A DNA stretch of 64,000 nt, taken from contig NC_083243.1 in assembly GCF_032191835.1 (NCBI RefSeq), positions 190,960,001-191,024,000 on the forward strand, written 5' to 3'. A program made the translations under genes and the position numbers. The notes under the pieces are model-generated. The model saw only the letters and a list, made by a program, of their open reading frames with translations. It was not told the DNA's origin and did not search any database. Source of the stretch: Heteronotia binoei (Eukaryota). Shown piece after piece: positions 1,254 to 61,661 of this stretch (position 1 is its first letter; each line of letters opens with the position of its first letter).

Positions 1254-1783
1254 TAGGGTTGCCAAGTCCAATTCAAGAAATATCTGGGGACTTTGGGGGT
1301 GGAGCCAGGAGACTTTGGGGGTGGAGCCAGGAGACATTAGGGGTGGAGCCAAGATCAAGGCTGTGACAAGCATCATTGAACTCCAAAGGGAGTTCTGGAC
1401 ATCACATTTAAAGGGATAGCACACCTTTTCAATGCCTTCCTTCCACAGGAAATAATGAAAGATAGGGGCACCTTCTTTTGGGGCTCATAGAATTGGACCC
1501 CGTGGTCCAATCTTTTTGAAACTTGGGGGGTACTTTGGGGAGAGGCACTAGATGCTATACTGAAAATTTGGTGCCTCTACTCCAAAAAACAGCCCCCCCA
1601 GAGCCCCAGATACCCGCAGATCAATTCTCCATGATTTTCTATGGGAATAAATCTCCATAGGGAATAACAGAGTTCCCAGTAGACATCTCCCTCCCCTCCC
1701 CCCGCTTTCTGACGACCCTGAAGTGGGGGGAGGCTCTCCAAACTGTGTGATCTCCTGCCCCCACCTGGGGATTGGCAACCCTA
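1254..1783. mobile_element. hAT-type MITE
   Basis: TIR TAGGGTTGCCA...TGGCAACCCTA; 8-bp TSD attacaac/atgacaac; internal 22-bp tandem unit; sister copy at 51298-51814. Confidence 0.85.
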
Positions 1784-12445: not shown

Positions 12446-13030
12446 AATGAATGACTGAAGTTCATAACAGTGTGTCTGCTCTAGGGAAAGGGAGCTTCTG
12501 TGAAGATAACACTGAGGGGGTGGGGATCATGGGGGTCCCCATTGTCAATGGTTGGGGTGGGGGCAGTGCAGTGGAAGGAAATTGATGTTTTTGTGGGTTG
12601 TGTGAGGTTTTAGGGGTATGCCCACTGAACATACTGGCATGCAGGAACATGGTTTCCATTGCAATGCATCACAGCTACATCACTTACACCTGGAATACGG
12701 AATAGAACTGGAATGACAATTTCTAAGCACCAATTGTGCTGGAACTGCAATGACAGAGCCCAGAGTGGAATGACAGTCATGTTGTCCCTTCCTCCATTCC
12801 GGGGATCTGGAAACAACAAACAGCAATCCAAGGTAGTCTTACAGGGCCACAGCCAGCACCCCCTGAGCCTGGGAGCCAGTTAAACATGACCATGGGAGGC
12901 CGGATGAGAGTCTCACCCTGAACAGGAGGGCAGCTGCAAGAAAGCACCCAGGTCTGAAGGGGGCATGCAATTCTGAAGGAGTCCCACATCCAGGTAGAAG
13001 GATGGTAACCCAAGTGGTCCCTCTTCAGAC

Positions 13031-13312
13031 AGAAGAAGAAGAAGATATTGGATTTATATCCCGCCCTCCACTCCAAAGAGTCTCAGAGAGGCTCACAATC
13101 TCCTTTACCTTCCTCCCCCACAAGAGACACCCTGTGAGGTGGGTGGGGCTGGAGAGGGCTCTCACAGCAGCTGCCCTTTCAAGGACAACTTCTGCCAGAG
13201 CTCTGGCTGACCCAAGGCCATTCCAGCAGCTGCAAGTGGAGGAGTGGGGAATCAAACCCGGTTCTCCCAGATAAGAGTCCGCACACTTAACCACTACACC
13301 AAACTGGCTCTC
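13031..13312 (-). mobile_element. Squam3-like SINE, full length
   Basis: tRNA head (gagagccagtttggtgtagtggtt...) and L2-like tail with (CTT)n; near-identical to 55795-56072. Confidence 0.85.
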
Positions 13313-13810
13313 CAGTTTGGCAGTGACAGGCAGTGACCGTGCACCTGTCATCAGCAAGGGTCTCTTTCAGGGGGGTGCACCAGGAGAGGAAAATGGGGCT
13401 CTCCTGACCTGCCTGTCTCCATTCCTAGCTGTGATTTGCACCAGCTTCTGGCCCCTTAAAATGCTGGTCGCATAGGCCAGCAATGGGCCTACCTCCAAAC
13501 TATGCCACATGCTGCCCCACCTCCAAACTATGCCACAAGGCCATGCCAAGGCTGAATTGCCACGGACGCAGCTGCACAAGCCGCCAGGTACACTGCTAGA
13601 ACTCTTTTTCCCTCTTACTTGGCTGCCATGTCAACGGTCCCTTAGGGAGCTGGCTAGCAGTGCTGCCCCTGCACCACACTTGGCCGCTGTGGCATAGGCG
13701 TGGTGGTTCAAGATTGTTCTGCCCAGTGGTACAACACCCGAAGACACTATTGGAGGGCGGGATTCGAAACCTGCTCCCTGTCCCTGTTCAGAATGAAGTT
13801 GCCTCATATT

Positions 13811-21240: not shown

Positions 21241-22600
21241 AGGGGAACATTTCAGGAGGCAGTAAGAAAAGGGTTTAGAAAGTCACAGTACTTAGGTAAA
21301 AATACCTCTGTCCACAGAAATGCTCCAATGAATCCATGCTGTTCTCTAGAATGAGCAATCAGAACTACCTCAAAACCAAAACATTTGACATTTATCTCAT
21401 AATTTCTTGTTTTTCTCGGGAGCAACAACTAAATTGATTGTGTTAAGGAAGATTGTCTACTTTTTTTTTCTTTACTAGGAAATAAATTCTTCTGTCTTTC
21501 CTTTGGGCAATGCAAAATTCACAAAAGAAAAACATTTTCCATCCATAATATGGAACGTCAAATCTTTTGTACAAAAAGACAGCTAATAGAAGATCACAGG
21601 TCTATGTTTCCCTGGTTCTGTCTCACATGATCAAAATGGGCAGAGGATCTGGGGTGGGTGGATGGCTGTTTCATTTCATTATGCACAACAATCTTCATAG
21701 AGATTAAACATATTTTATTAATACTCAACAGTGAAAACATCAGGATGACCTTAAACAATTGAATATCTTGAAAACAAGGTTATTATAACCAACAAAACCC
21801 CCTTCAGACAGGTTTTCATAAACTCTTTCTATCAAAAGTCTTTACCTGTCCCTTCTGTCTACTAGCAACAACTGCATTTCAAGGAGGATGGTTTCAGTTG
21901 GAGGACATGCCTCTCTTGCCCGGTGGTGTGGCCACAATTTGGCTGCTTCTCAGAGCTAATAAATGTGTCAGGAGATCCAACCACAGAACTTCATGTAGTT
22001 TCACTCTTTGGCCTTGGTTGGTGGCTATATTTTGCTTATCCTCAACATCTGACTGGTTGCCATTCTTTAGGTCAAGCAGAATTTTCTTCCATGTGAAACT
22101 GAACAGAGAAAGAACAGACCTTGTTTTTTGGCATACCATCTGATAATTGCAAGACTTTCAGTAATGATCTACATGTTATATTTGCTCTGTGAAGACAACC
22201 AAAAACAGTGTGCCATGTCTGTAACAGTTACACTGGCTTGCTATCATATAGCAAGTCTCCATAACACTAAAACAAAGTTTTGCTGCAGCAAATTCCCTCC
22301 CTAATTTGTCAAAGGTGTATAGAATTCAGTTACAGTATTATCACCTGCCCTTGGATAAATGAAAGCTGGTTCCCAGGATACAAAGAACAAACAAGAATAA
22401 TTCACACTTTGGTTTTCTGTAACTTCTGGTGTGTGGTTCAGAGATCTCACTTATGGTAAAATACATAAACTGCGGAATTAAACTGCAAAATCTGAAAGTC
22501 CCACAAAGATGAAGGGAAAATATGGATGGAATAGTTCCTCTTAAGTACACACATAAGGAAACTATGGAAGTTACCTGTTATCAGACAGACAGACAATCTT

Positions 22601-23292
22601 GAAGAAGAAGATATTGGATTTATATCCCGCCCTCCACTCCGAAGAGTCTCAGAGCGGCTCACAATCTCCTTTACCTTCCTCCCCCACAACAGACACCCTG
22701 TGAGGTAGAAGATGATATTGGATTTATATCCCGCCCTCCACTCCGAAGAGTCTCAGAGCGGCTCACAATCTCCTTTCCCTTCCTCCCCACAACAGACACC
22801 CTGTGAGGTAGAAGAAGATATTGGATTTATATCCCACCCTCCACTCCGAAGAGTCTCAGAGCGGCTCACAATCTCCTTTACCTTCCTCCCCCACAACAGA
22901 CACCCTGTGAGGTAGAAGAAGATATTGGATTTATATCCCATCCTCCACTCCGAAGAGTCTCAGAGTGGCTCACAATCTCCTTTACCTTCCTCCCCACAAC
23001 AGACACCCTGTGAGGTAGATGAAGATATTGGATTTATATCCCGCCCTCCACTCCGAAGAGTCTCAGAGCAGCTCACAATCTCCTTTACCTTCCTCCCCCA
23101 CAACAGACACCCTGTGAGGTGGGTGGGGCTGGAGAGGGCTCTCACAGCAGCTGCCCTTTCAAGGACAACCTCTGCCAGGGCTCTGGCTGACCCAAGGCCA
23201 TGCTAGCAGGTGCAAGTGGAGGAGTGGGGAATCAAACCCGGTTCTCCCAGATAAAAGTCCGCACACTTAACCACTACACCAAACTGGCTCTC
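22601..23292 (-). mobile_element. Squam3-like SINE with four extra tandem copies of its 3' ~103 bp
   Basis: Units start at 22604, 22708, 22811, 22915 and 23018; the last continues into the full tRNA head. Confidence 0.9.
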
Positions 23293-24636: not shown

Positions 24637-24959
24637 CTTCTTACAGTCTAGTCACTCAGAAATTATTTTTCAACCATGGCTTCCCTTTTTTGTTTGAATA
24701 TTATTTTTAACGCCATCACAAAGGCTAGTTTGCCTAAAAGGCTTTTTTACCTGCTGTGAAATGTGAAAACATTTGCGTTCCCTTGAAGGCATCTGCCACT
24801 TTATCAAATGCACATTGGATGATGAAAAGGTTTCAGTGGAAATCTAGAAAAAGACATGCTCTGGTTGACAAGATTTGGTTTGGACTAATGCCAGTTTGTA
24901 CATTCAAAAACCTTCATAGGGCTGATGGTTAAGAGTGAGAGTCTCTTACCAGCCTTCAG

Positions 24960-25148
24960 AGGCATAAACCATGCAGCACTTCTTCAGGGGAGGTTTTAGT
25001 GATCCTTGGGCCCCAGCTGAGTCCAATTCCATGGGGAGGGGAGGGGCCTCAGCAGCCATTTTCTTCAGTGGAGCTGATCTCTGCCAGCTAGAGATCAGCT
25101 GTAAAAGCAGGAGATCTCCAGGCCCCACCTGGAGGCTGGCAACCCTAT
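24960..25148. mobile_element. partial hAT-type MITE
   Basis: Ends 'ggagatctccaggccccacctggaggctggcaacccta'. Confidence 0.6.
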
Positions 25149-28124: not shown

Positions 28125-28378
28125 AGGGGGAGGGACGGTGGCTGAAGGGGAGGGACGGTGGCTGAAGGGGAGGGACGGTGGCTCAGTGGTAGAGCATCTG
28201 CTTGGGAAGCAGAAGGTCCCAGGTTCAATCCCCGGCATCTCCAAAAAAGGGTCCAGGCAAATAGGTGTGAAAAACCTCAGATTGAGACCCTGGAGAGCCG
28301 CTGCCAGTCTGAGAAGACAATACTGACTTTGATGGACCGAGGGTCTGATTCAGTATAAGGCAGCTTCATATGTTTCAT
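28125..28378 (+). mobile_element. tRNA-derived SINE (Squam2-like) with a 20-bp head unit repeated three times
   Basis: A box tggctcagtgg and B box ggttcaatccc; sister copy on minus strand at 61449-61661. Confidence 0.85.
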
Positions 28379-32869: not shown

Positions 32870-33770
32870 AAAGAAGAAGACTGCAGATTTATACCCCGTC
32901 CTTCTCTCTGAATCAGAGACTCAGAGCAGCTTACAATCTCCTATATCTTCTCCCCCCACAACAGACACCCTAAGTAAGTAAGTAAGTAAATTTTTATTTA
33001 TACCCCGCCCTCCCCGCCGAGGCAGGCTCAGGCTTACAGAACATGATACGAAATCATGGTATCACAAATGACAGATAAAATCAATAACAATATAAGTACA
33101 AATATAAATTAATTTAAAAAGTTAAAACAGGGAAATTACAGGCCAGTCAGTCTGACTTCAATACCGGGAAAGTTGGTAGAAACCATTATCAAGGACAGAA
33201 TGAGTAGGCACATTGATGAACACGGGTTATTGAGGAAGACTCAGCATGGGTTCTGCAAGGGAAGATCTTGCCTCACTAACCTGTTACATTTCTTTGAGGG
33301 GTGAACAAAGGAACTACAATCCAGAGGAACTACAATCTCTATTTATCCGGCAGCGTATTTATTCTGGTTACATCCTAAAGGCTTCTTGGAAGAGGGCAGT
33401 TTTGCAGGCCCTGTGGAACTGATTGATGTCCCGCAGGGCCCGCACCTCCTCCGGCAGCTGATTCCACCATTGGGGGGCTTTTATAGAGAAGGCCAGCTCC
33501 CTGGTCGTTTTAAGTTTGGCCCTCCTTAGGCCCAGGGATTTCCAGGAGATTTTGTGAACTGGAGCGCAGTGCCCTCTGGGGAACATATGGAGAGAGGTGG
33601 TCCCTGTGAGGTGGGTGGGGCTGAGAGGGCTCTCACAGCAGCTGCCCTTTCAAGGACAACTCCTGCGATAGCTATGGCTAACCCAAGGCCATTCCAGCAG
33701 CTGTAAGTGGAGGAGTGGGGAATCAAACCCCGTTCTCCGCTCGCTTAACCACTACACCAAACTGGCTCCA
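32870..33770. mobile_element. jumble of Squam3 (-), L2 (-) and CR1 RT (+, 33130-33310) fragments
   Basis: GNYRPVSLTSIPGKLVETII...HGFCKGRSCLTNL (CR1 RT); L2 C-terminal ORF 33368-33586; SINE halves at both ends. Confidence 0.75.
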
Positions 33771-39720: not shown

Positions 39721-41949
39721 GCCCTCATACCTTAAAATTCTTAGCCAGTTTGGAGTTGCCTTGTGGAAGTCAACAGGGCCGAACCAGAACAGTCTTGCTT
39801 CCAGGAGAGAATTTCCAACTCCAGTAAGTGTCATTTGTGTATCTTAGTTTATCTGAACAGAGCACACACACACATATGCCCTGGGTGAAGAGGACCAGAA
39901 CCAGGTGCAATACGAAGGGACTATAAAGTAACCACTGGCCCTGGGGATTCACAGTTTTTAAATTTCCCTAGCACATGACACAAGAGGCATTATTCAAAAG
40001 CCCAAGGTGAGCTACTGACACACTTCATTGTTGCTTTTGATTTTACATTTCCCTATTGACTTCACTACTCCAATAGAGGAAAGCAGAGTCCTAAAATAGA
40101 ACCTAGGTCTCTCGAAATTGCCTTACAGATATGTAAATACTGTGTTTTCAGATCCCACAAGTTTTCTTTTTGGGTGTGTGTGTGTGTGTGTTAACCAAAT
40201 TTATTAAATTTTGCAATATACTGAAATGCATTTCGAATAATAAAAAAGAGAAAAAAGCAACAATTCAATCCTTATCAATACATTACACATTTTTTTTCTC
40301 ACTTCCCCCACCTCTTTTCTTTAACCTCCGTCGGTGCTTCAAGCTATAGAAAAAAAACAATTAAGGTATCATCCATTTTAGAATCTTGCACTATAAAACT
40401 TACATATAATCTAATAACATATCTATATCTCTATTTATAATTCGGTCTTCTAGCTTTCCTTCAGGACATTGTTAACACATCCTGAACTTATATATCTCAA
40501 TATACTAAATCATATCACCTTAACCTTTTAGTTCACCCATAGTATTACACTTATCTTTCATCTATTATCACACCAATTATAGTTATTTATTATAATTATC
40601 TCTATATTTTCTAAAAACTAATAAAAAGAGCTATCATATATTGATTCAAAAAATTCTTTCTAATCATCTATCTCCCTCATTTCCCCCAATTTCAGGTTAT
40701 ACTTTCAAAAACCACCAAATGTCTCTTAACTCTCCATTGCTTTTCAATATAGTCCTGAAACTTCTTCCATTCATCTTTAAATTTTTCTGCATCACTCTCT
40801 TTCAAGATTCTAGTAAGTCTATCCATTTCACTCCAATGTAAAATTTTTAAAATCCAGTCCCATTTATCTGGTATTTCAGCTTGCTTCCACCTTTGTGCAA
40901 ACAATGTTCTTGCAGCTGACAACATATACCACACCAAAGTCCTGTCTTGCTTCGGAAAACTTTCCATTTGTAATCCTACCAGAAAGGTATCTGGTGTCCT
41001 TTTAACTCCACATCCCCAAATCTTTGACATCTCTTGTCGGATCATTTGCCAAAATTGTCTCGCTTTTTCACAAGTCCACCACATATGGTAAAAAGAGCCT
41101 TCATGCTTTTTACATTTCCAGCACCTTTTTCAATTGGATCATTCAATGTTTCTTTCATCATTTCTGTTGTTGGATTTACCTTCACATTTTGTAAATAAGC
41201 TTCTATTCTTTATCAACTCGCTGGCCTTTAAATAAGTTAGCATAGTACTTGTAGTACTTGTAGAATTCTCTTTTGATGCCCTCCTGAACTACAATTTCTT
41301 TGACACCTGTTTTAATCTTGTTTATGTATTTATTTTCTCTTCTTTTCTTCATTTGCCACACCAAATACTTTCCAGGTTTATCTGCCCCTTCAAAAGATTT
41401 TTGTTGGAGTCTTTTCAAATTCCACTCCACCTCTTTATTCAGTAAATGACTTAACTAGCTCTGTAAAACGACCCTTGGCACTTACCGTGAGGGGTCCTTC
41501 TCCTAGGAGGAAAGGAGGACATCTTGGGTGCTTTCCCACCGTCCAATCAGGGAGGCAGGAATCAAAACTTCCTCTTCCTGTGGCTGTGGGGAACCACCCA
41601 TCTTCAGTTCGGGTGACTCCGAGCAGCAGTATAACGTTAACTGTATCTATAAAAATAAAAACTTCTAACAAGTGAAACAACAACAACTATTAGTCTGTCG
41701 GTGCCCATAAAGGAGATGGGCGATCGACGAAGGTATAAACTTTATTGATAGGAAAAGTAGGGAACAGGCCCGAAGGCCAAGTGGAGAATTCAGCTGCCCG
41801 AGGTAGGGCGATAGATGGGAGGGCAAGATGTCCTCCTTTCCTCCTAGGAGAAGGACCCCTCACGGTAAGTGCCAAGGGTCGTTCTCCCTAGGAGGCGGAG
41901 GACATCTTGGGTGCTCCTAGAGCAGTAGGTTACTTAGGGAGGGATCGCC

Positions 41950-43020
41950 CTACTCAGGCAGTACATGCTGTAAGATTCGTCTACCGAAGGCCGCATCCGC
42001 CGACGCGTAAGAGTTCAGCTTGTAGTGTTGAACGAAGGTGGAGATTGACGACCACGTAGCTGCCTTACACACTTCCTCGACTGAGGCGTTCCTGCTGAAG
42101 GCTGCGTTGGCGGCTGCGCTTCTGGTCGAGTGTGCTGTGATCCCAGGCGGAACCTCGAGGTGCAAGGCCTTGTAGGCCTCCGCTATGCACTGCTTAATGG
42201 CATGACTAATGGCCGACTTGGACATCTTTTGCCCCAATCTGGGTGCAGAGATATTGATGAACATAGAGTCTGACTTACGTAGTGACTCTGTTCTAATCAG
42301 GTAGACTTTGATCGCCCTGCGCACGTCCAGGGTGTGCCAGGTTCGTTCCTTGGGGTGTCTGGGATCCGGACAAAAGGATGGTAGGTTGATCTCTTGATTT
42401 TGGTGGAATCTGGATGACACCTTTGGTTGGAAGGTAGGATCCGGGTAGAGTACGACTTTGTCCTTGTGGAACACGCATAGCTCCTTCCTAGCAGATAGAG
42501 CTCCTAACTCGGAGACCCTTCTGGCCGATGTTATTGCCACCAGGAAAATCGTCTTCATGTGAAGCATCTTTAAGGGCACTTGCATGAGCGGTTCGAAGGG
42601 TGGACCTGTTAGGGCGGTCAGCACTGGGTTCAGCCTCCAGGTCGGGAACCGATGGGTCTGCGGTGGGGAGCTTAAGGAAGCCCCTCTAAGGAACCGTCGG
42701 ATGTGAGGGTGAGACGACAGGGATACACCATCCACCTGCTGAAGTACTGATGACAGTGCCGCGATCTGGCGTTTGAGGGTGGCTGGCTTCAGGCCGGACT
42801 GTAGCCCATCCTGAAGGAATTGTAGCACCCTGGGAACAGTAGGGTGTAATGGATCCACACTCTTTCTCCGGCACCACCTGTGGAAGGCTTTCCAAGACAT
42901 GTTGTAGATCCGCGTCGTGGATTCCTTTCTGGATGCTAAGATGGTATTCGTCACCTCGCTGGTGTACCCTAGGTCTAGAAGCGATCTCCTCTCAACCTCC
43001 ACGCGGTCAATCTCAGCCAT
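41950..43020 (-). CDS. DIRS tyrosine recombinase (open, from MAEIDR)
   Basis: ITSARRVSEL (R), AHSTRS (HxxR), AATW (W), FVQHY (Y). Confidence 0.92.
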   Translation of the reverse strand: MAEIDRVEVERRSLLDLGYTSEVTNTILASRKESTTRIYNMSWKAFHRWCRRKSVDPLHPTVPRVLQFLQDGLQSGLKPATLKRQIAALSSVLQQVDGVSLSSHPHIRRFLRGASLSSPPQTHRFPTWRLNPVLTALTGPPFEPLMQVPLKMLHMKTIFLVAITSARRVSELGALSARKELCVFHKDKVVLYPDPTFQPKVSSRFHQNQEINLPSFCPDPRHPKERTWHTLDVRRAIKVYLIRTESLRKSDSMFINISAPRLGQKMSKSAISHAIKQCIAEAYKALHLEVPPGITAHSTRSAAANAAFSRNASVEEVCKAATWSSISTFVQHYKLNSYASADAAFGRRILQHVLPE

Positions 43021-43748
43021 TCTGGGCGGGGGTGCCACACTGGTCCCTGCAGCAGCATGTCCGGCCCGGTTGGTAGGTGGAGGGGTTGCTCCGCCGACAT
43101 CTGCTGGATTGAAGAGAACCAGGGACGCCGAGGCCACCAGGGCGCAACTAAGATGACTTCTGCCCCCAGCGACCTGATCCTTCTGAGAACTTTTGGGATG
43201 ACCGGGATTGGCGGGAAGGCATACAGGAGACCTTGAGGCCACGGGGATGTTAGGGCGTCTGTGGCCTCCGCCTGACTGTGAAAGTACCTTGTGAAGAACC
43301 GGGGCAGCTGGTGATTCTGCGGAGATGCGAAGAGGTCCAGGGTTGGCGGGCCGAAGTGATCCACTATCTGTAGGAATATAGTCCTGTTGAGAGACCACTC
43401 CCCTGCCTGGATGCTCTCTCGACTGAGCCAGTCCGCCTGCACGTTGTGCGCCCCCTTGATGTGTTCTGCTCTTATTGACTTCAGGTGAAGTTCTGCCCAG
43501 CCGAACAGTTTTCCGGCCTCCCTGTAGAGGGAGCTGGACCTGGACCCCCCTTGATTGTTTAAGTAGGCCTTCGCTGCTATGTTGTCCGTTCGCACTAGGA
43601 CGTGTTGGCCTGAGACCTGGTCCTGGAAGTGTAGGAGGGCTAGGCGAACTGCCCGAGGCTCTAGTAGGTTGATTGGGAGGTTCGATTCCCTGGTCGACCA
43701 CTGGCCCTGTGTTGGGATCTCGTTGAGGGTTGCCCCCCAACCGGAGAG
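42975..43748 (-). pseudogene. DIRS pol C-terminal part: RNase H (first Asp lost) plus N6-adenine methyltransferase-like domain
   Basis: LSGWGA, INLLEPRA, RTDN, NVQADWLSR (RH); LDLFAS and YAFPP (MT-like); no RT upstream. Confidence 0.88.
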
Positions 43749-45519
43749 TCCCACCTGGAGACAGGCAACCTTACAAAAAACAAAGTAGTATGCACATCTT
43801 CCATCCAGGTATTTCTCTGGCTGGGAAGAGGCTGTCTCTGTGAGAGACTGCAATATTAAAAAAGTTTGGTAATGAACAACTTTTGAAATTATATCTTTTT
43901 AGACCCAAAATCAGAAGATGAGAATTCAAAATAGCACAAAAAATACCTCAACTGTATTTCCACACTATTTCCACCCTCCCCCCCCTCCAGATGTGAAAGG
44001 AGGGGAAGGTTTGAACAGACAAACCAAAATTCCTTCCCTCTTGGATTAGGTGATGCTTACCTTAACAAAGGCTAAAAACAGACACAATGGATTTGGCCAG
44101 TACTCTTATCTGACCCTGATAAGTTTTTACAAAGGAAAGGTGGAGGGGGAGAATAATGAGCTTTCTGCCTGGGTGGGACTCAAAATTGTAACTCTTTCCA
44201 GTTTCTTTAACTCAAGCTGAATTTGGCTGAGTTTAATTCAAGAGGGTCTGCATGAGATTTGCCAATCAGTACTACATTAGTTGTTGCTGCTCCTGCAGCT
44301 GGAGGTTCTACTTTCTGTACTTTCAGATTTAAATGACAAACTTGCCCATTTGAGGTTAGCTGTCTTGTGTTACTGTGACCTTTGAGAAGGAGAGGCAACA
44401 CCTCTTATATTACAAACACTGAATTTGATCTTTTCTGAGGCTCTGCAAGAAAACTTTCCTAGCCAGCCATCCACTGGAAGATATTGGGACAAGTTCTGTA
44501 CAAGAATGGTGGCAAACCAAAAACTGTGGTTCCTCTTGCCACTGGCTAGTTATAGGTCTATAAGAAAATGAGGCTTTCTCTCAAAGACACTGAGTTGCTT
44601 GTACCTTAAGGAGACCTGAGATAAACAAAAATTTAATTTCTCAGGGCAATGCATTTAAAATTCTATTCCTTTGCCTTAGTTGCTTATCAAATCTTTACTG
44701 CTACAGATTTCCATTGAGCAAGAGGGAGAACAATTAGCATTTCTTCCTGATGGCAGGAGTGCTGAGCATTTGCATATTTTAGCCAGTTCTATTTGGGCTA
44801 ATCTGCAGGCACTCTGTACAAGCTCAGAGGCTATACCATTTAAATTTCATAGAACTGAGGAAATAAATATTTCCTGACTTTATAAGCAAGAGAGAGAAAG
44901 ATGAACTTGGGAGTTTCACAGATTTTCATTCAGCCAATTTGAAAGTTAAAACTGGTCAGTTTCTTACATTTTGCTATAAATGCTTTGAATGAATAAAAAC
45001 TAGTTCAATCTCTCTTTCTCAGGTACTTGATGCTGGCATCTTTAAAGGGTTAACCTAAATATATTACATCAAGCTCCCATTACCCTGCAGAGAAAACTAA
45101 CTCTGCAGGCTGGAACCCTTGCTGGGATTCCAGGAGATCTCCAGGCCTCACCTGGAGAAATGGCCTGGTCTAATTGTAGTCCAAGTCATTGCTTGTATGT
45201 TTTCTTGTTTAGTCAAGGGAAAAGGCGCCCTTGTTACCTTTAAACCTAATAAAGCCAGATCTCTCTGTTTTAAGAGACATACAAGTCTAGATGTTAGATT
45301 TTCCTTTGGGTAGGGGGGGAGGTTCAGAGACAAAGGAACCTTGCCTGCCCATGCGGGACAACCATTCCCTGAGGTTCCACAGAATTCTGGCTTTCAAATT
45401 CCCCAAATGGGATGAGCTAAAGACAGAAAATTTCTGGCGTAAAGGGCTGAGGCTTGCTCATGTAGCAGTGTCTGGAGCAAGTCCTTGCTAAAGGAATACC
45501 TTGTGCCATAAGTGGGGAA
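43749..45519. other. foreign host-like DNA inside the DIRS
   Basis: AT-rich, CpG-poor, no DIRS homology; contains MITE-end remnants at ~43750-43772 and ~45120-45160. Confidence 0.75.
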
Positions 45520-46630
45520 CTCTGCATCTTCTGCTAGTAGACCCTGGGACTGTAGATCTGCCACAGGTGCATCAACCAGGGGAACCTGCAGTAAGTTATT
45601 AGCAAAGGCAGGTAGCTCATATAGCTTCTTAAAAGAGTTGGGAACCTGCCTGCTGGTACTTGGTTTTGCCCATTCGGCTCTTAGCTGGCGCTCGAAGAAC
45701 TCTGGAAAGGGGAAGATCCTGTCAGAGGGTCGGTGCCTGGGGAAGAACTCTGAGTTCCCCTTGGGTATGTTCCTGGTGGCTAGTCAGGGGGTTGACAACC
45801 TCCTGGTCCTCTGGCGACCCTTGGAGGTCCAGAGCAGCCAGCACTTTGGGTAAGAGGGATTGGAACTCCTCTGCCCTGAAGAAGCGTGAGGAGGGTTCTG
45901 GTACAGTCGTACCCTCTATCTCCTCATCCGATATGAGTTCGCCCTCCTCCCTTTCCCCCTGTTCTGACTCATCTGAGTGATCCCAGTACTGGGATCTCTC
46001 GCCCTCCAGGGAGTCACCGGCTATGGAGTCTCTGGTGGCCCTGTAATGGGAGCCCCGTTCCCTAGACCTTTTGGGTGAGGGGGACCCGGGAGGAGAGGGT
46101 GGGCTAGAGGGCCTTGGCCTCTTGAGGGTGGCTGCCTCAACTGCAGCTCCTACAGTCTGCCTGATTGATTCTAGGAAATCAGAAAAACAGAGAAGGTCCC
46201 ATCATGGGTACATTACCCAAGCCCGTCTGGGGCTGGAGGGTCTGCGTGGCCTCCTGCTGCGGCTGCACCTAGAAGGTGTCGAAATCTCCCGCCTGGAGGT
46301 TGGCATGGGGGGTTCCCCGCCCCTGGAGGCTGCTCAGTTGCTGGTCCCCGTCCTTCCGTGCGCGTTTGCGCTTTTCAAAATGGCCCTCGTGGCCAGGGCA
46401 GCGCTCTGAGGAGGAAGTCTCCTCTGCTGCCGAGGACGACCAGCGCCGCTTCCGCTCCGCTCGCTCCTCTTCGGATCTTCTCCCTGTTCTGCCCCTACAG
46501 GGCACGTTGCCGGCAGCCGCGGCAAGCCCCGTGGTCATGCCGGCTCCGGGAAGCGGCCTCTCGGTCCCGCGCGATGCGCAGGCAGCCGAGTCCTCGTTGG
46601 GGCAAGCGTCCTTTGCCCTGCGCGCCATCT
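45520..46630 (-). pseudogene. DIRS ORF1 (gag-like), disrupted and C-terminally truncated
   Basis: EEGELISDEE, FERQLRAEWAKP, QVPLVDAPVADL; TGA at 46202-46204 and a frameshift near 45785. Confidence 0.75.
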
Positions 46631-47024
46631 GTTCCGCGCCGCGGCTTGAGTGCAGCCCGAGCCGCCGGCGCGCTGCTTCTCTTGGGGGGGGGGGGATTCG
46701 AGAATCCCCAGGAGCAGAGAAGCCAAGAAGCAAAGAAGCAAGGAAGAAGTATTGGCAGGTGAATAAGGATCCAAAGAAGCAGTAGAGAAAGCTTGGTAAG
46801 ATGAATAGAAGGAAGGAGGAAGAAAGATCTTTTTTTTTTTTTTTGAAAGGAAAGGCACTTAAAGGGATAGGACCTATCCTAAGCACATGCTCTCCCTGTC
46901 GAGGCAGGAAAGGAACTGAAGATGGGTGGTTCCCCACAGCCACAGGAAGAGGAAGTTTTGATTCCTGCCTCCCTGATTGGACGGTGGGAAAGCACCCAAG
47001 ATGTCCTCCGCCTCCTAGGGAGAA

Positions 47025-48035
47025 TTGTAAGTTCTCGCAAAATCTTCTTTTTCCCCGGTCTCTTTCTTAATTCAATTTCTTTTTTCCTTATTTCCTTTTG
47101 TAAGTCCAACAATTGCTTTTCATTTGCCCTTCTATCCTTATTATTCAATGTAATTAATGTTCCTCTCATCACAGCCTTATAGGCATCCCAAACCGTTTGA
47201 AATTGTACCTCTTGGTTGTTATTTATTTGGAAAAAAGCTTTAGTTTCTTTTTCTAGAAATGCCACTACTTCCACTTTCTGTAATAAGTCATCATTTATCC
47301 TCCACCTCCTCTCTTTTTTCCTCCCTTTAGCCAACCATATCAACCGGTTATGGTTTGCACCTATTTTCGGAAGAATCTCTACTTTTTTTGTGATCGATCC
47401 CAGCTCTTTTGTAGCCCATAACATATCAATCCTAGAAAAGGTATTATGTCTGGCTGAAAAGAAAGTATAGTCTCGTACCCTGGGGTTGAATTTTCTCCAC
47501 ACATCTTCTAAGCTCTCTTGTTTGATTAGTTCAAAAAAATGCTTTAGGTAGTTTCCCATCTGCATTTTCCCCCCAGATTTATCTAAGGAGTTCTGGATAG
47601 TTCCATTAAAGTCTTCCATAAGCATTATCTGATCGTATGTTACTTGATCCAATTGTTTCATAATATCATTGAAAAAGTCACTCTTAGCCCCATTAGGAGC
47701 ATAAAGTCCCAACAAGAGAGTCTTTTTGCCATACATCACAACTTCTACTGCCATATATCTATCTTCGTTATCTTTAAATATCAGTTTTTGACTCCAGCTC
47801 CTTTTTTATATAAAAAATCACTCCCCTTTTTTTTCTTTAGTCAATGAACCAAATTCTTCCCCTAAAGATTTATTGTGTAAAAATTTGTAATCCGATTGTC
47901 TAATATGCACTTCTTGTAAACAAATTATGTTACATTTTTTGTTTTGTAATCCAATGAAATGTTGCTCTTCGTTTTTGCGGTGAGTTTAGGCCATTAAAAT
48001 TCCAAGAAATTAATTTGTAACCGTAATGATTCTTC
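47025..48035 (-). pseudogene. L1 ORF2 APE endonuclease region
   Basis: LGLYAPN, DFNG, DYTFFSARHNTFSRIDM; ORF 46879-47754 runs on into the DIRS end. Confidence 0.88.
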
Positions 48036-50719: not shown

Positions 50720-51905
50720 TGACACTCATATTTGGGATAGATTCAGTACAGTTCTGATCACTGTACCTCAAAAAGGACATTATAGCATTTTCAAAAGTGC
50801 AGAAAAGGGCAACTAAAATGATGAAGGGGACAGAACATCTTCGCTATGAAGAAAGGTTAAAGAGGTTAGGGCTCTTTAGCTTGGAGAAACCAATGATCGA
50901 GGGGGGACATCATATAGGTTTACCAAATTATGCATGAAATAGAGAAGGCAGAGAAAAAAGTACTCCCCCGCCCTTTCTTAAGGTATAAGAACTTTTGGGC
51001 ACTCAATGAAATTAATGAGCACTAGGCTTAGAACAGATATAAGGAAATACTTCTTCACCCAAAGAGTAATTAACACATGGAGTTCACTGTTGCAGGAAGC
51101 AGTGGAGGCTACAAGCACAGACAGCTTCAAGAGGGGATTGGATAAACATATGGAGCAGAGATTCATCAGTGGCTATTGGCTACAATGTATAGATAGAATA
51201 TTATGTCTGAGTCAGTGTTACTCTGTATTCTTGGTGCTTGGGGGAGCGGCAACAGTGGAAGGACTTCTGGCCCCAGTGGTGGATCTCCTGGTGGTTCTAG
51301 GGTTGCCAAGTCCAATTCAAGAAATATCTGGGGACTTTGGGGGTGGAGCCAGGAGAATTTGGGGCTGGAGCCAGGAGACATTGGGGCAGAGCCAAAAGCA
51401 AGGGTGTGACAAGCATAATTGAACTTCAAGGGAGTTCTGGCCATCACATTTAAAGGGACTGCACATCTTTTTAAATGCCTTCCTTCCATAGGAAATAATG
51501 AAGGATAGGGGCACCTTCTTTGGGGGCTCATAGAATTGGACCCCCTGGTCCAATCATTTTGAAACTTGGGAGGTATTTTGGGGAGAGGCACTAGATGCTG
51601 TACTGAAAATTTGGTGCCTCTATCTCAAAAAACAGCCACCTCAGAGCCCCTGAACCCGCGGATCAATTCCCCATCATTTCCTATGGGAATCGTTCATGGA
51701 GGTGCATGATGGTTGTGGGGGCGGGGCTTCCCCCTCCGGCCAGCTGGCTGGGGGAGGGGGGAAGCCTGTAAAACCGGGGGATCCCCCTCTGGGACCTGGG
51801 GATTGGGAAGCCTAGATGGTACCTGGGTTTTGACTGTTATTTGACATACAACAGTGTTGGTCCATTGGCCTGATCCAACATGGCTTCTTTTTATGTTTTT
51901 TACTA
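50720..51905 (+). mobile_element. CR1-type LINE 3' fragment interrupted by a MITE
   Basis: KVQKRATKM...EERLKRLGLFSLEK, KYFFTQRVINTW; 3' tail ggcctgatccaacatggcttct. Confidence 0.8.
51298..51814. mobile_element. hAT-type MITE (sister of 1254-1783)
   Basis: TAGGGTTGCCAAG start; degenerate TSD ggtggttc/gatggtac. Confidence 0.82.
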
Positions 51906-55780: not shown

Positions 55781-56555
55781 TCAGGGGTGTTCAAGAGAGC
55801 CAGTTTGATGTAGTGGTTAAGTGTGCGGACTCTTATCTGGGAGAACTGGGTTTGATTCCCCACTCCTCCACTTGCACCTGCTAGCATGGCCTTGGGTCAG
55901 CCAGAGCTCTGGCAGAGGTTGTCCTTGAAAGGGCAGCTGCTGTGAGAGCCCTCTCCAGCCCCACCCACCTCACAGGGTGTCTGTTGTGGGGGAGGAAGGG
56001 AAAGGAGATTGTGAGCCGCTCTGAGACTCTTCGGGGTGGAGGGCAGGATATAAATCCAATATCTTCTTCTTCTTTGTTATGAGGGCCAGATCTGACATAA
56101 ATGAGACCTTGTTGGGCCAGAAAGCAGAGATACAAACTTTATAAAGGACACAGAGGTTCTATCTTTCTTTTTTTTTAAAGGTGCTTTCTTTGTGGGATCG
56201 AGGGAACTAGGCAAAGGAAGCTCTGGTTCTTTCCTTCCTTCCCCAGGGGACAAAGAAGTGCCTCAGCCAACAGAAGGAAGAGAGGCTTGGCTCAGAAGCT
56301 ATCCTGAACGATTGAGAGAGCCTGGCAAAGCAAGCTCTCCCTCCCCCCTTCCTCCCCAAGGGAGGACCCTCAGCCAATGGAAAAAATATAGGCTTTGTTC
56401 TATAGCTCCTGTGTGATTGAGCAAGCCTGGCAAAGTAAGATGTGATACAGAAGGAAGCAAGAGAGAGGGAGAAGGAAGCAGACTTGCTCAAAGGTCTGAT
56501 AGGAGCCCTCCGGGGGTCTGATCTGGCCCCCGGGCTGCATGTTTGATGATGTCAT
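55781..56555. mobile_element. hAT-type MITE interrupted by a Squam3-like SINE (55795-56072, +)
   Basis: caggggtgttcaa, then the SINE, then gttatgagggccag...; homologous to 20770-21240. Confidence 0.75.
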
Positions 56556-61448: not shown

Positions 61449-61661
61449 CATATGAACATATGAAAGTGCCTTATACTGAATCAGACCCTCGATCCATCAA
61501 AGTCAGTATTGTCTTCTCAGACTGGCAGCGGCTCTCCAGGGTCTCAAGCTGAGGTTTTTCGCACCTATTTGCCTGGACCCTTTTTTGGAGATGCCGGGGA
61601 TTGAACCTGGGACCTTCTGCTTCCCAAGCAGATGCTCTACCACTGAGCCACCGTCCCTCCC
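61449..61661 (-). mobile_element. tRNA-derived SINE (Squam2-like)
   Basis: Reverse complement of 28167-28378. Confidence 0.88.

What the first reader, a model, noticed from the sequence alone, without database searches (positions are those of the whole stretch)
43749..45519. DIRS retrotransposon has swapped its RT for about 1.77 kb of host-like DNA
Seen: DIRS homology stops in gag (..QGLLAEDAE, ~45520) and resumes just after the first RNase H Asp (LSGWGA, ~43748). The intervening DNA is AT-rich, intron-like, starts in the last ~25 bp of a TAGGGTTGCC-family MITE, has no TIR, TSD or poly(A), and I see no second copy of it in the window. The flanking L1 rejoins precisely, so both DIRS halves belong to one insertion. 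Inference: sequence capture by RT template switching or by break repair. If the chimera exists at several loci, it would be a transducing non-autonomous YR retroelement, which I do not know to be described for vertebrate DIRS.
Basis: partly seen in the sequence, partly recalled or inferred. Interest (0 to 1): 0.75.

Follow-up and report, generated by a model that had tools for sequence, protein, structure and literature searches.

The report
Dead DIRS copy with host-DNA filler
A very young gecko DIRS jumping gene has lost its reverse-transcriptase region and carries about 1.77 kb of old, non-coding host-type DNA in its place; it is a real but probably one-off chimera, and I could not test whether it has spread.

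Summary
A DIRS1-type tyrosine-recombinase retroelement lies on the minus strand at 41467-47022. Its ends are pristine: 97-nt inverted repeats at 100%, and a 92-nt internal complementary region that matches both termini perfectly.

Gag homology stops at 45520. Pol homology resumes at 43748-43751, just after the first RNase H aspartate. No reverse-transcriptase remnant is left anywhere in the element.

The 1771 bp in between look like long-resident host DNA, not a young transposon:
- GC is 41%.
- CpG observed/expected is 0.04, against 0.58 in the DIRS arms, and is the lowest of any same-size bin in the window.
- There is no ORF above 66 aa and no Pfam or Rfam match.
- The ends carry no terminal repeats, target duplication or poly(A).
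- There is no second copy in the window.
- It begins inside the last 24 bp of a MITE and holds a second, decayed MITE remnant.

The key claim, that this is a mobile "transducing" DIRS, stays untested.

My best reading is a single chimeric dead copy, most likely made by a double template switch during reverse transcription. Post-integration break repair is the main rival.

The analogue is known for LTR elements in animals, and a non-autonomous DIRS (TOC1) is known in algae. Interest is modest.

The parts
46913..47022 (-). DIRS 5' terminus (47022-46991 pairs with the ICR) and 5' inverted terminal repeat (47009-46913)
   Evidence: 97/97 match to the other arm and 32/32 match to ICR 41915-41884
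45520..46628 (-). Truncated, frame-broken gag. Candidate ATG at 46628. There is a definite one-base frame change near 45757-45790 and a probable second one near 46200-46270. About the last 200 residues are missing relative to P0121.
   Evidence: homology to P0121 and P0127 lies in two frames and ends exactly at 45520
43749..45519 (.). 1771-bp filler of host-type, non-coding, CpG-depleted DNA that replaces the gag C-terminus, RT and the start of RNase H
43750..43773 (+). Last 24 bp of a TAGGGTTGCC-type MITE, cut off by the DIRS junction. The MITE terminus points into the filler.
   Evidence: 21/24 match to 25124-25147, which ends at that MITE's terminus
45072..45157 (+). Old, decayed remnant of the same MITE family inside the filler
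   Evidence: 69% over 86 bp to the copy at 24930-25147, E 6e-8; core 45131-45157 at 96%
42975..43748 (-). RNase H (lacking its first catalytic Asp) plus the methyltransferase-like domain. The frame is open from the junction to the stop.
   Evidence: (Dam-like match, E 2.7e-4, below Pfam's cutoff)
41950..43740 (-). Tyrosine recombinase frame, open for 596 codons from the junction. It is in the same absolute frame as the last gag piece.
   Evidence: Phage_integrase, E 8.4e-7, above cutoff
41824..41915 (-). Internal complementary region (ICR), perfectly complementary to both termini
41467..41610 (-). 3' inverted terminal repeat (41514-41610) and 3' terminus (41526-41467 pairs with the ICR)
40692..41466 (-). 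Host L1 ORF2 remnant downstream of the DIRS
   Evidence: the reading frame continues from the upstream L1 piece when 41467-47022 is removed
47023..47754 (-). Host L1 ORF2 remnant upstream of the DIRS

Best explanation
This is one defective, chimeric copy of a young DIRS1-type retroelement.

Shown: the element kept everything it needs in cis, namely both termini, both inverted repeats and the ICR. It lost about 1.8 kb (the gag C-terminus, all of RT and the first strand of RNase H) and gained 1771 bp of old, CpG-depleted, MITE-bearing non-coding host DNA at the same place.

Inferred: the swap happened in one step while the cDNA was made. The reverse transcriptase left the DIRS RNA inside RNase H, copied part of a co-packaged host transcript (intronic or non-coding RNA, in the sense of the window's minus strand), and returned to the DIRS RNA inside gag. 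The finished chimera was then circularised on the ICR and integrated into an L1 by the recombinase supplied in trans or from the same particle.

Inferred: the copy cannot move on its own. It is most likely the only copy.
For: - Anatomy and breakpoints.
- Very young insertion: 189 paired positions (ITR against ITR, ICR against the termini) show no mismatch over about 346 distinct sites. That gives a divergence since integration below about 0.9% at 95% by my own calculation. This leaves little time for a separate large deletion plus a 1.8-kb insertion.
- Replacement rather than interruption, with both terminal structures kept. This is the stated signature of template-switch chimeras of LTR elements in animals (PMC5131818).
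- Recent union of two different histories: CpG observed/expected is 0.04 in the filler and 0.58 in the DIRS arms, and the RNase H-MT and recombinase frames are still open.
- The filler has no transposon ends and starts inside a MITE. It is therefore a random piece of host sequence, not a nested element.
- No donor within the 64-kb window. This speaks weakly against local replication-based template switching on DNA.
Against: - The filler shows no sign of having been RNA: no exon, no splice junction, no poly(A). Known LTR-mediated captures are mostly spliced mRNAs, although those were found by looking for gene retrocopies.
- Microsimilarity at the switch points could not be examined, because neither the donor nor a close parent element was available (best protein relative 60% identical).
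- The junctions are not confirmed by reads.
- Break repair with templated filler would give the same picture.
- The copy number is unknown.
Confidence: 0.45

Rival explanations
1. Post-integration break repair. A complete DIRS copy inserted into the L1. A later double-strand break or replication-fork collapse removed about 1.8 kb and patched the gap with 1.77 kb copied from another genomic place (templated filler or MMBIR-type repair).
For: - The filler looks like ordinary untranscribed host DNA: CpG observed/expected 0.04, MITE pieces, no exon.
- Earlier unchecked notes of this scan describe one-off fillers inside other transposons of the same genome (s1-323869, s1-322569).
- Gag carries at least one frame change, so some decay may have happened in place.
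Against: - The element shows no mutation at about 346 sites of ITR, ICR and termini, so the time window is short for a rare kilobase-scale deletion plus insertion.
- No donor lies within 43 kb upstream or 19 kb downstream.
- DIRS elements do not excise, so there is no built-in source of breaks.
Confidence: 0.27
2. Mobile non-autonomous chimera. The swap arose once, by either route, in a master copy. Its RNA still carries both termini and the ICR, so it was copied in trans, and this locus is one of several copies.
For: - All known cis structures are perfect.
- The chimera is about the length of a full element. About 1.8 kb was lost, by my estimate from P0121 and the pol alignment, and 1.77 kb was gained.
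- Gag is frame-broken in an otherwise pristine copy, which hints that the template RNA was already defective.
- There are no AATAAA signals on the element's sense strand within the filler.
- Secondary retroposition of such chimeras is reported for LTR elements (PMC5131818).
Against: - No second copy could be looked for.
- The sharp CpG contrast and the open 3' frames show that the union is recent, leaving little time to spread.
- Most such chimeras noted in this genome were judged one-off (unchecked notes).
- Zero AATAAA where 1.2 are expected is not significant.
Confidence: 0.15
3. Nested insertion of an unrecognised transposon into the DIRS, followed by a deletion that removed one end of that transposon and the DIRS RT.
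For: Nested insertions are the commonest cause of foreign DNA inside transposons, and low-copy families would not show a second copy in 64 kb.
Against: - It needs two events in a very young element.
- There is no terminal repeat, target duplication or poly(A) at either end.
- There is no transposon protein remnant.
- A CpG observed/expected of 0.04 and a 69%-identity MITE relic mark the DNA as old, whereas a transposon that jumped into a young DIRS should itself be young.
Confidence: 0.08
4. Assembly artefact: the filler was joined in by mistake.
For: Repeats invite misjoins, and the junctions were not checked with reads.
Against: - Two exact misjoins inside one element would be needed.
- The element's outer flanks belong to one L1 in one frame.
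- There are no Ns in the window.
Confidence: 0.05

Closest known systems
LTR-mediated retroposition chimeras (Tan et al. 2016, PMC5131818); also Bs1 of maize and Ty1 chimeras cited there
   Same: Part of the internal ORFs of a retroelement is replaced, not interrupted, by foreign sequence. Both terminal structures are kept, and the product is a pseudo-element that could be copied again in trans.
   Different: - The carrier here is a tyrosine-recombinase (DIRS) element with ITRs and an ICR, not an LTR element with integrase.
- The captured piece is non-exonic, CpG-poor DNA with MITE relics, not a spliced mRNA.
- Microsimilarity at the junctions was not testable.
TOC1 of Chlamydomonas, called a non-autonomous DIRS retrotransposon in PMC9940879
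   Same: A DIRS-type element without its own reverse transcriptase.
   Different: TOC1 is a proven multi-copy, mobile family in an alga. Here there is one copy in a gecko, still with open recombinase and methyltransferase frames, and no evidence of mobility.
Reptile DIRS1-type elements (relatives P0001-P0016 from Rhineura, Pantherophis, Sceloporus, Crotalus and others)
   Same: RNase H, the methyltransferase-like domain, the recombinase, gag, and the ITR plus ICR layout.
   Different: - The closest protein relatives are only 50-60% identical.
- RT is absent.
- Gag is truncated and frame-broken.
Templated filler DNA at repaired breaks; one-off host-DNA fillers inside transposons of this genome (unchecked scan notes s1-323869, s1-322569)
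   Same: A deletion and an insertion of unrelated host DNA at the same place, with no transposon ends on the insert.
   Different: Those cases are in cut-and-paste transposons, where excision makes the break. A DIRS element has no known excision step.

Membership tests
DIRS1-type YR retrotransposon | Inverted terminal repeats | tested here: met
   97/97 complementary arms at 41514-41610 and 46913-47009
DIRS1-type YR retrotransposon | Internal complementary region matching both outer termini | tested here: met
   ICR 41824-41915: 32/32 to the 5' terminus and 60/60 to the 3' terminus
DIRS1-type YR retrotransposon | Tyrosine recombinase ORF | tested here: met
   Pfam Phage_integrase, E 8.4e-7 and 29.4 bits against a cutoff of 27.1; the frame is open for 596 codons
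DIRS1-type YR retrotransposon | Reverse transcriptase domain | tested here: not met
   The RT parts of P0005, P0014, P0043 and P0071 match nothing in 41300-47200. It is therefore a defective derivative, not an autonomous member.
DIRS1-type YR retrotransposon | RNase H followed by a methyltransferase-like domain | tested here: met
   50-60% identity over about 255 residues to reptile DIRS pol proteins. The Dam-like Pfam match is below cutoff, and the first catalytic Asp is missing.
Mobile non-autonomous / transducing retroelement (TOC1-like, or secondary LTR-mediated retrocopies) | Two or more loci sharing the same chimeric junctions with different flanks | not testable with these tools
Mobile non-autonomous / transducing retroelement (TOC1-like, or secondary LTR-mediated retrocopies) | Cis-acting ends intact while the enzymes are lost | tested here: met
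Template-switch (RT-mediated) chimera | Internal ORF replaced, not interrupted, with both terminal structures present | tested here: met
Template-switch (RT-mediated) chimera | Microsimilarity between carrier and donor at the switch points | not testable with these tools
   No donor locus and no close parent element were available
Template-switch (RT-mediated) chimera | Captured sequence bears marks of RNA (spliced exons, poly(A)) | tested here: not met
   No coding exon and no poly(A) at either end. An intronic or non-coding RNA would leave no such marks, so this does not exclude the mechanism.
Nested transposon insertion | Terminal repeats, target-site duplication or a poly(A) tail at the insert ends, and other copies | tested here: not met

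The most novel reading that the evidence does not exclude
The chimera is a working non-autonomous DIRS that carries 1.77 kb of host DNA and has been copied in trans to further loci. That would be the first transducing tyrosine-recombinase retroelement described in a vertebrate, and it would show that the DIRS replication route (ICR-templated circle, recombinase integration) tolerates a fully foreign interior.
Probability: 0.15. Interest if true: 0.55.

Novelty: new member of a known kind. Interest (0 to 1): 0.3.

Why it matters
As a single dead copy it matters little. It is one more example of a retroelement whose interior was swapped for host sequence, here in a DIRS element rather than an LTR element.

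It does show that both cis structures of a DIRS can sit on an element with no RT. That makes it a natural test case for what a DIRS needs in cis.

If other loci share the junctions, it would extend RNA-mediated sequence capture and shuffling to tyrosine-recombinase retroelements in vertebrates. It would also give a minimal vector-like DIRS: ends, half a gag, the methyltransferase-recombinase part and the ICR.

Tried and rejected
Tools that were not available:
One look-up of the scan's notes by sequence on the filler and one protein search with a gag piece were sent after it. I sent no DNA pattern of the region to any public collection.

Searches that gave nothing useful:
- An exact look-up of ten ORFs of the filler, the junctions and the recombinase found none in the collection.
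- The word-based protein search with the junction-spanning ORF gave a best hit of 60% identity and none covering the filler-encoded N-terminus. This genome's copies of the family are therefore not in that collection, and a copy-number test through proteins is impossible.
- For that reason I ran no further search on the short filler ORFs. A blank would mean nothing.
- Look-ups of the scan's notes by sequence for the filler and for the ITR/ICR region were blank, which is uninformative.

Ideas rejected:
- The filler as a diverged RT: no RT similarity.
- The filler as an RNA gene or a tandem array.
- The filler as a copy of nearby DNA.

Ideas left open:
- Poly(A)-signal asymmetry (0 on the element's sense strand, 3 on the other) is not significant.
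- The frame match between the last gag piece and the recombinase frame across the filler has a one-in-three chance expectation.

Full report
**What is there**

The window comes from a squamate genome. An earlier, unchecked note of this scan names the gecko Heteronotia binoei, and the nearest protein relatives are from lizards and snakes.

A DIRS1-type tyrosine-recombinase retroelement occupies 41467-47022 on the minus strand (5556 bp). Its cis structures are complete and unmutated:
- The inverted terminal repeats 46913-47009 and 41514-41610 are 97/97 complementary.
- A contiguous 92-nt internal complementary region, 41824-41915, pairs perfectly with the 5' terminal 32 nt (47022-46991) and with the 3' terminal 60 nt (41526-41467).

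That makes 189 paired positions over about 346 distinct sites without one mismatch. By my own calculation the divergence since integration is below about 0.9% (95% bound).

The element sits inside an L1 ORF2 remnant. The L1 reading frame continues unbroken when 41467-47022 is taken out.

**The breakpoints**

A phmmer search with a gag piece found distant gag proteins. Laid back on the window, P0121 (551 aa) and P0127 (203 aa) align down to 45520 and stop there, at ..QGLLAEDAE. This corresponds to residue 352 of 551 in P0121. About 200 gag residues are therefore missing.

The same comparison shows that gag lies in more than one frame. There is a definite one-base frame change near 45757-45790 and probably another near 46200-46270.

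On the other side, pol relatives align from about 43751 downward through RNase H and the methyltransferase-like domain, to the stop at 42975. They read TDASLxGWGA where the window reads LQVGLSGWGA. Homology therefore resumes just after the first catalytic aspartate of RNase H.

The RT-bearing parts of P0005, P0014, P0043 and P0071 match nothing anywhere in 41300-47200. The recombinase frame (41950-43740, Pfam Phage_integrase above cutoff) and the RNase H-MT frame are both open right up to the junction.

**The 1771 bp in between (43749-45519)**

- Composition: GC is 0.41, against 0.55-0.58 in the DIRS arms.
- CpG: the most telling number is 3 CpGs where 73.6 are expected, observed/expected 0.04. 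The DIRS arms give 0.58 and the whole window 0.32. No other 1771-bp bin of the window falls below 0.10. This is DNA that has sat methylated in a genome for a long time, joined only recently to a young, CpG-rich element.
- Coding and RNA content: no ORF exceeds 66 aa. Ten ORFs gave no Pfam match apart from one sub-threshold DUF6207 hit at E 0.22. Rfam gave only one sub-threshold hit (STnc390, E 0.46, 19.8 bits against a gathering score of 50), and there is no tandem repeat.
- Transposon marks: there are no terminal inverted repeats, no flanking direct repeats and no poly(A) at either end.
- Copies: there is no second copy in the window, even with 9-base words.
- MITE pieces: on the plus strand the filler starts with the last 24 bp of a TAGGGTTGCC-type MITE (43750-43773, 21/24 to 25124-25147). 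The MITE terminus points into the filler, so one breakpoint of the donor fell inside a MITE. At 45072-45157 there is a second remnant of the same family, only 69% identical.

All of this fits a random stretch of intronic or intergenic host DNA. It does not fit a discrete, recently active transposon.

**How it arose**

Three facts constrain the history:
- The DIRS interior was replaced, not interrupted.
- The element as a whole is very young.
- The two kinds of sequence have very different CpG histories, so their union is recent.

A two-step route (nested transposon, then deletion) is unparsimonious in so short a time, and no transposon ends are present.

Two one-step routes remain.

*Template switching during reverse transcription.* This is the route I prefer (about 0.45). 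The enzyme leaves the DIRS RNA in RNase H, copies part of a co-packaged host RNA, and returns in gag. The cDNA is then completed on the ICR and integrated normally. This is the mechanism documented for LTR retrotransposons in Drosophila, mosquito, zebrafish, chicken and mammals. [quoted passage not shown] It explains why a copy with perfect ends has a foreign interior.

*Break repair after integration, with templated filler* (about 0.27). This suits the untranscribed look of the filler. It needs a rare kilobase-scale event in a short time, and the window holds no nearby donor.

The two cannot be separated without the donor locus and a close parent element. The closest relatives I could reach are only 50-60% identical in protein.

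**Is it mobile?**

This is the point that would make the finding interesting, and I could not test it:
- The exact ORFs are not in the protein collection.
- No protein above 60% identity exists there for this family.
- Look-ups of the scan's notes by sequence were blank, which means nothing according to the operators.

In favour of mobility:
- All cis structures are intact.
- The chimera is about as long as a full element. I estimate about 1.8 kb lost (199 gag residues plus roughly 380-400 pol residues before the RNase H Asp) against 1.77 kb gained.
- Gag is frame-broken in an otherwise pristine copy. This hints weakly that the template was already defective. I estimate roughly a one-in-three chance of one indel in gag arising in place, and about 6% for two.

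Against mobility:
- The sharp CpG contrast and the still-open 3' frames show a recent union.
- Comparable fillers noted elsewhere in this genome were judged one-off (unchecked notes).

I put the multi-copy reading at about 0.15.

**Comparison with what is known**

The element is a defective derivative of a reptile DIRS1-type family. ITRs, ICR, recombinase, RNase H-MT and gag were tested and met. RT was tested and is absent.

It works like, or at least looks like, the LTR-mediated chimeras of Tan et al. 2016. It differs in the carrier (a recombinase element that replicates through an ICR-templated circle) and in the cargo (non-exonic DNA).

Non-autonomous DIRS elements are not new in principle. 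TOC1 of Chlamydomonas is called one in PMC9940879. My full-text searches found no paper describing host-sequence capture by a DIRS element, but the library is incomplete.

**Verdict**

The capture mechanism is inferred, and the transduction claim is untested.

As it stands this is a single chimeric dead copy of a known general kind, so interest is modest (0.3). A whole-genome search for the two junctions would settle the matter in minutes.

Noticed in passing
window 45757-45790 and about 46200-46270: Gag of this otherwise pristine DIRS copy is split over three reading frames. There is one definite one-base frame change and one probable one, while the 1.8 kb of RNase H-MT and recombinase frames have none.
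   Followed up: partly
window 41950-43740 and 45520-45735: The recombinase frame is in the same absolute frame as the last gag piece across the 1771-bp filler. It is open from the very junction, which fits earlier scan notes that the recombinase continues the gag frame in intact elements. The chance expectation is one in three.
   Followed up: partly
window 1254-1783, 51298-51830, 24960-25147: Several copies of a TAGGGTTGCC-ended MITE family. Two long copies (about 530 bp) are 92-97% alike over the segments that matched (90 and 185 nt), and there is one short copy. The family is abundant enough that a random breakpoint inside one is unsurprising.
   Followed up: partly
window 22585-23205, with relatives at 13019-13316, 33623-33738 and 55795-56074 (inverted): A tandem array of about 103-104-bp units built from part of a dispersed repeat of about 280 bp. 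The dispersed copies are 94-97% identical, so the family is young and SINE-like.
   Followed up: no
window 28168-28374 and 61455-61661: A 207-nt inverted pair, 98% complementary and 33 kb apart: two young copies of some repeat in opposite orientation.
   Followed up: no
   Followed up: no
window 44650-44940: Weak internal direct and inverted repeats within the filler (units about 170-215 bp apart). They may be a relic of an old small duplication or of a further decayed MITE.
   Followed up: no
window 47023-47030 and 41459-41466: The L1 flanks read ..ACTTACAATT before the DIRS and TTACAGAGC.. after it. The shared TTACA could be chance or a short duplication or overlap at the recombinase target.
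   Followed up: no
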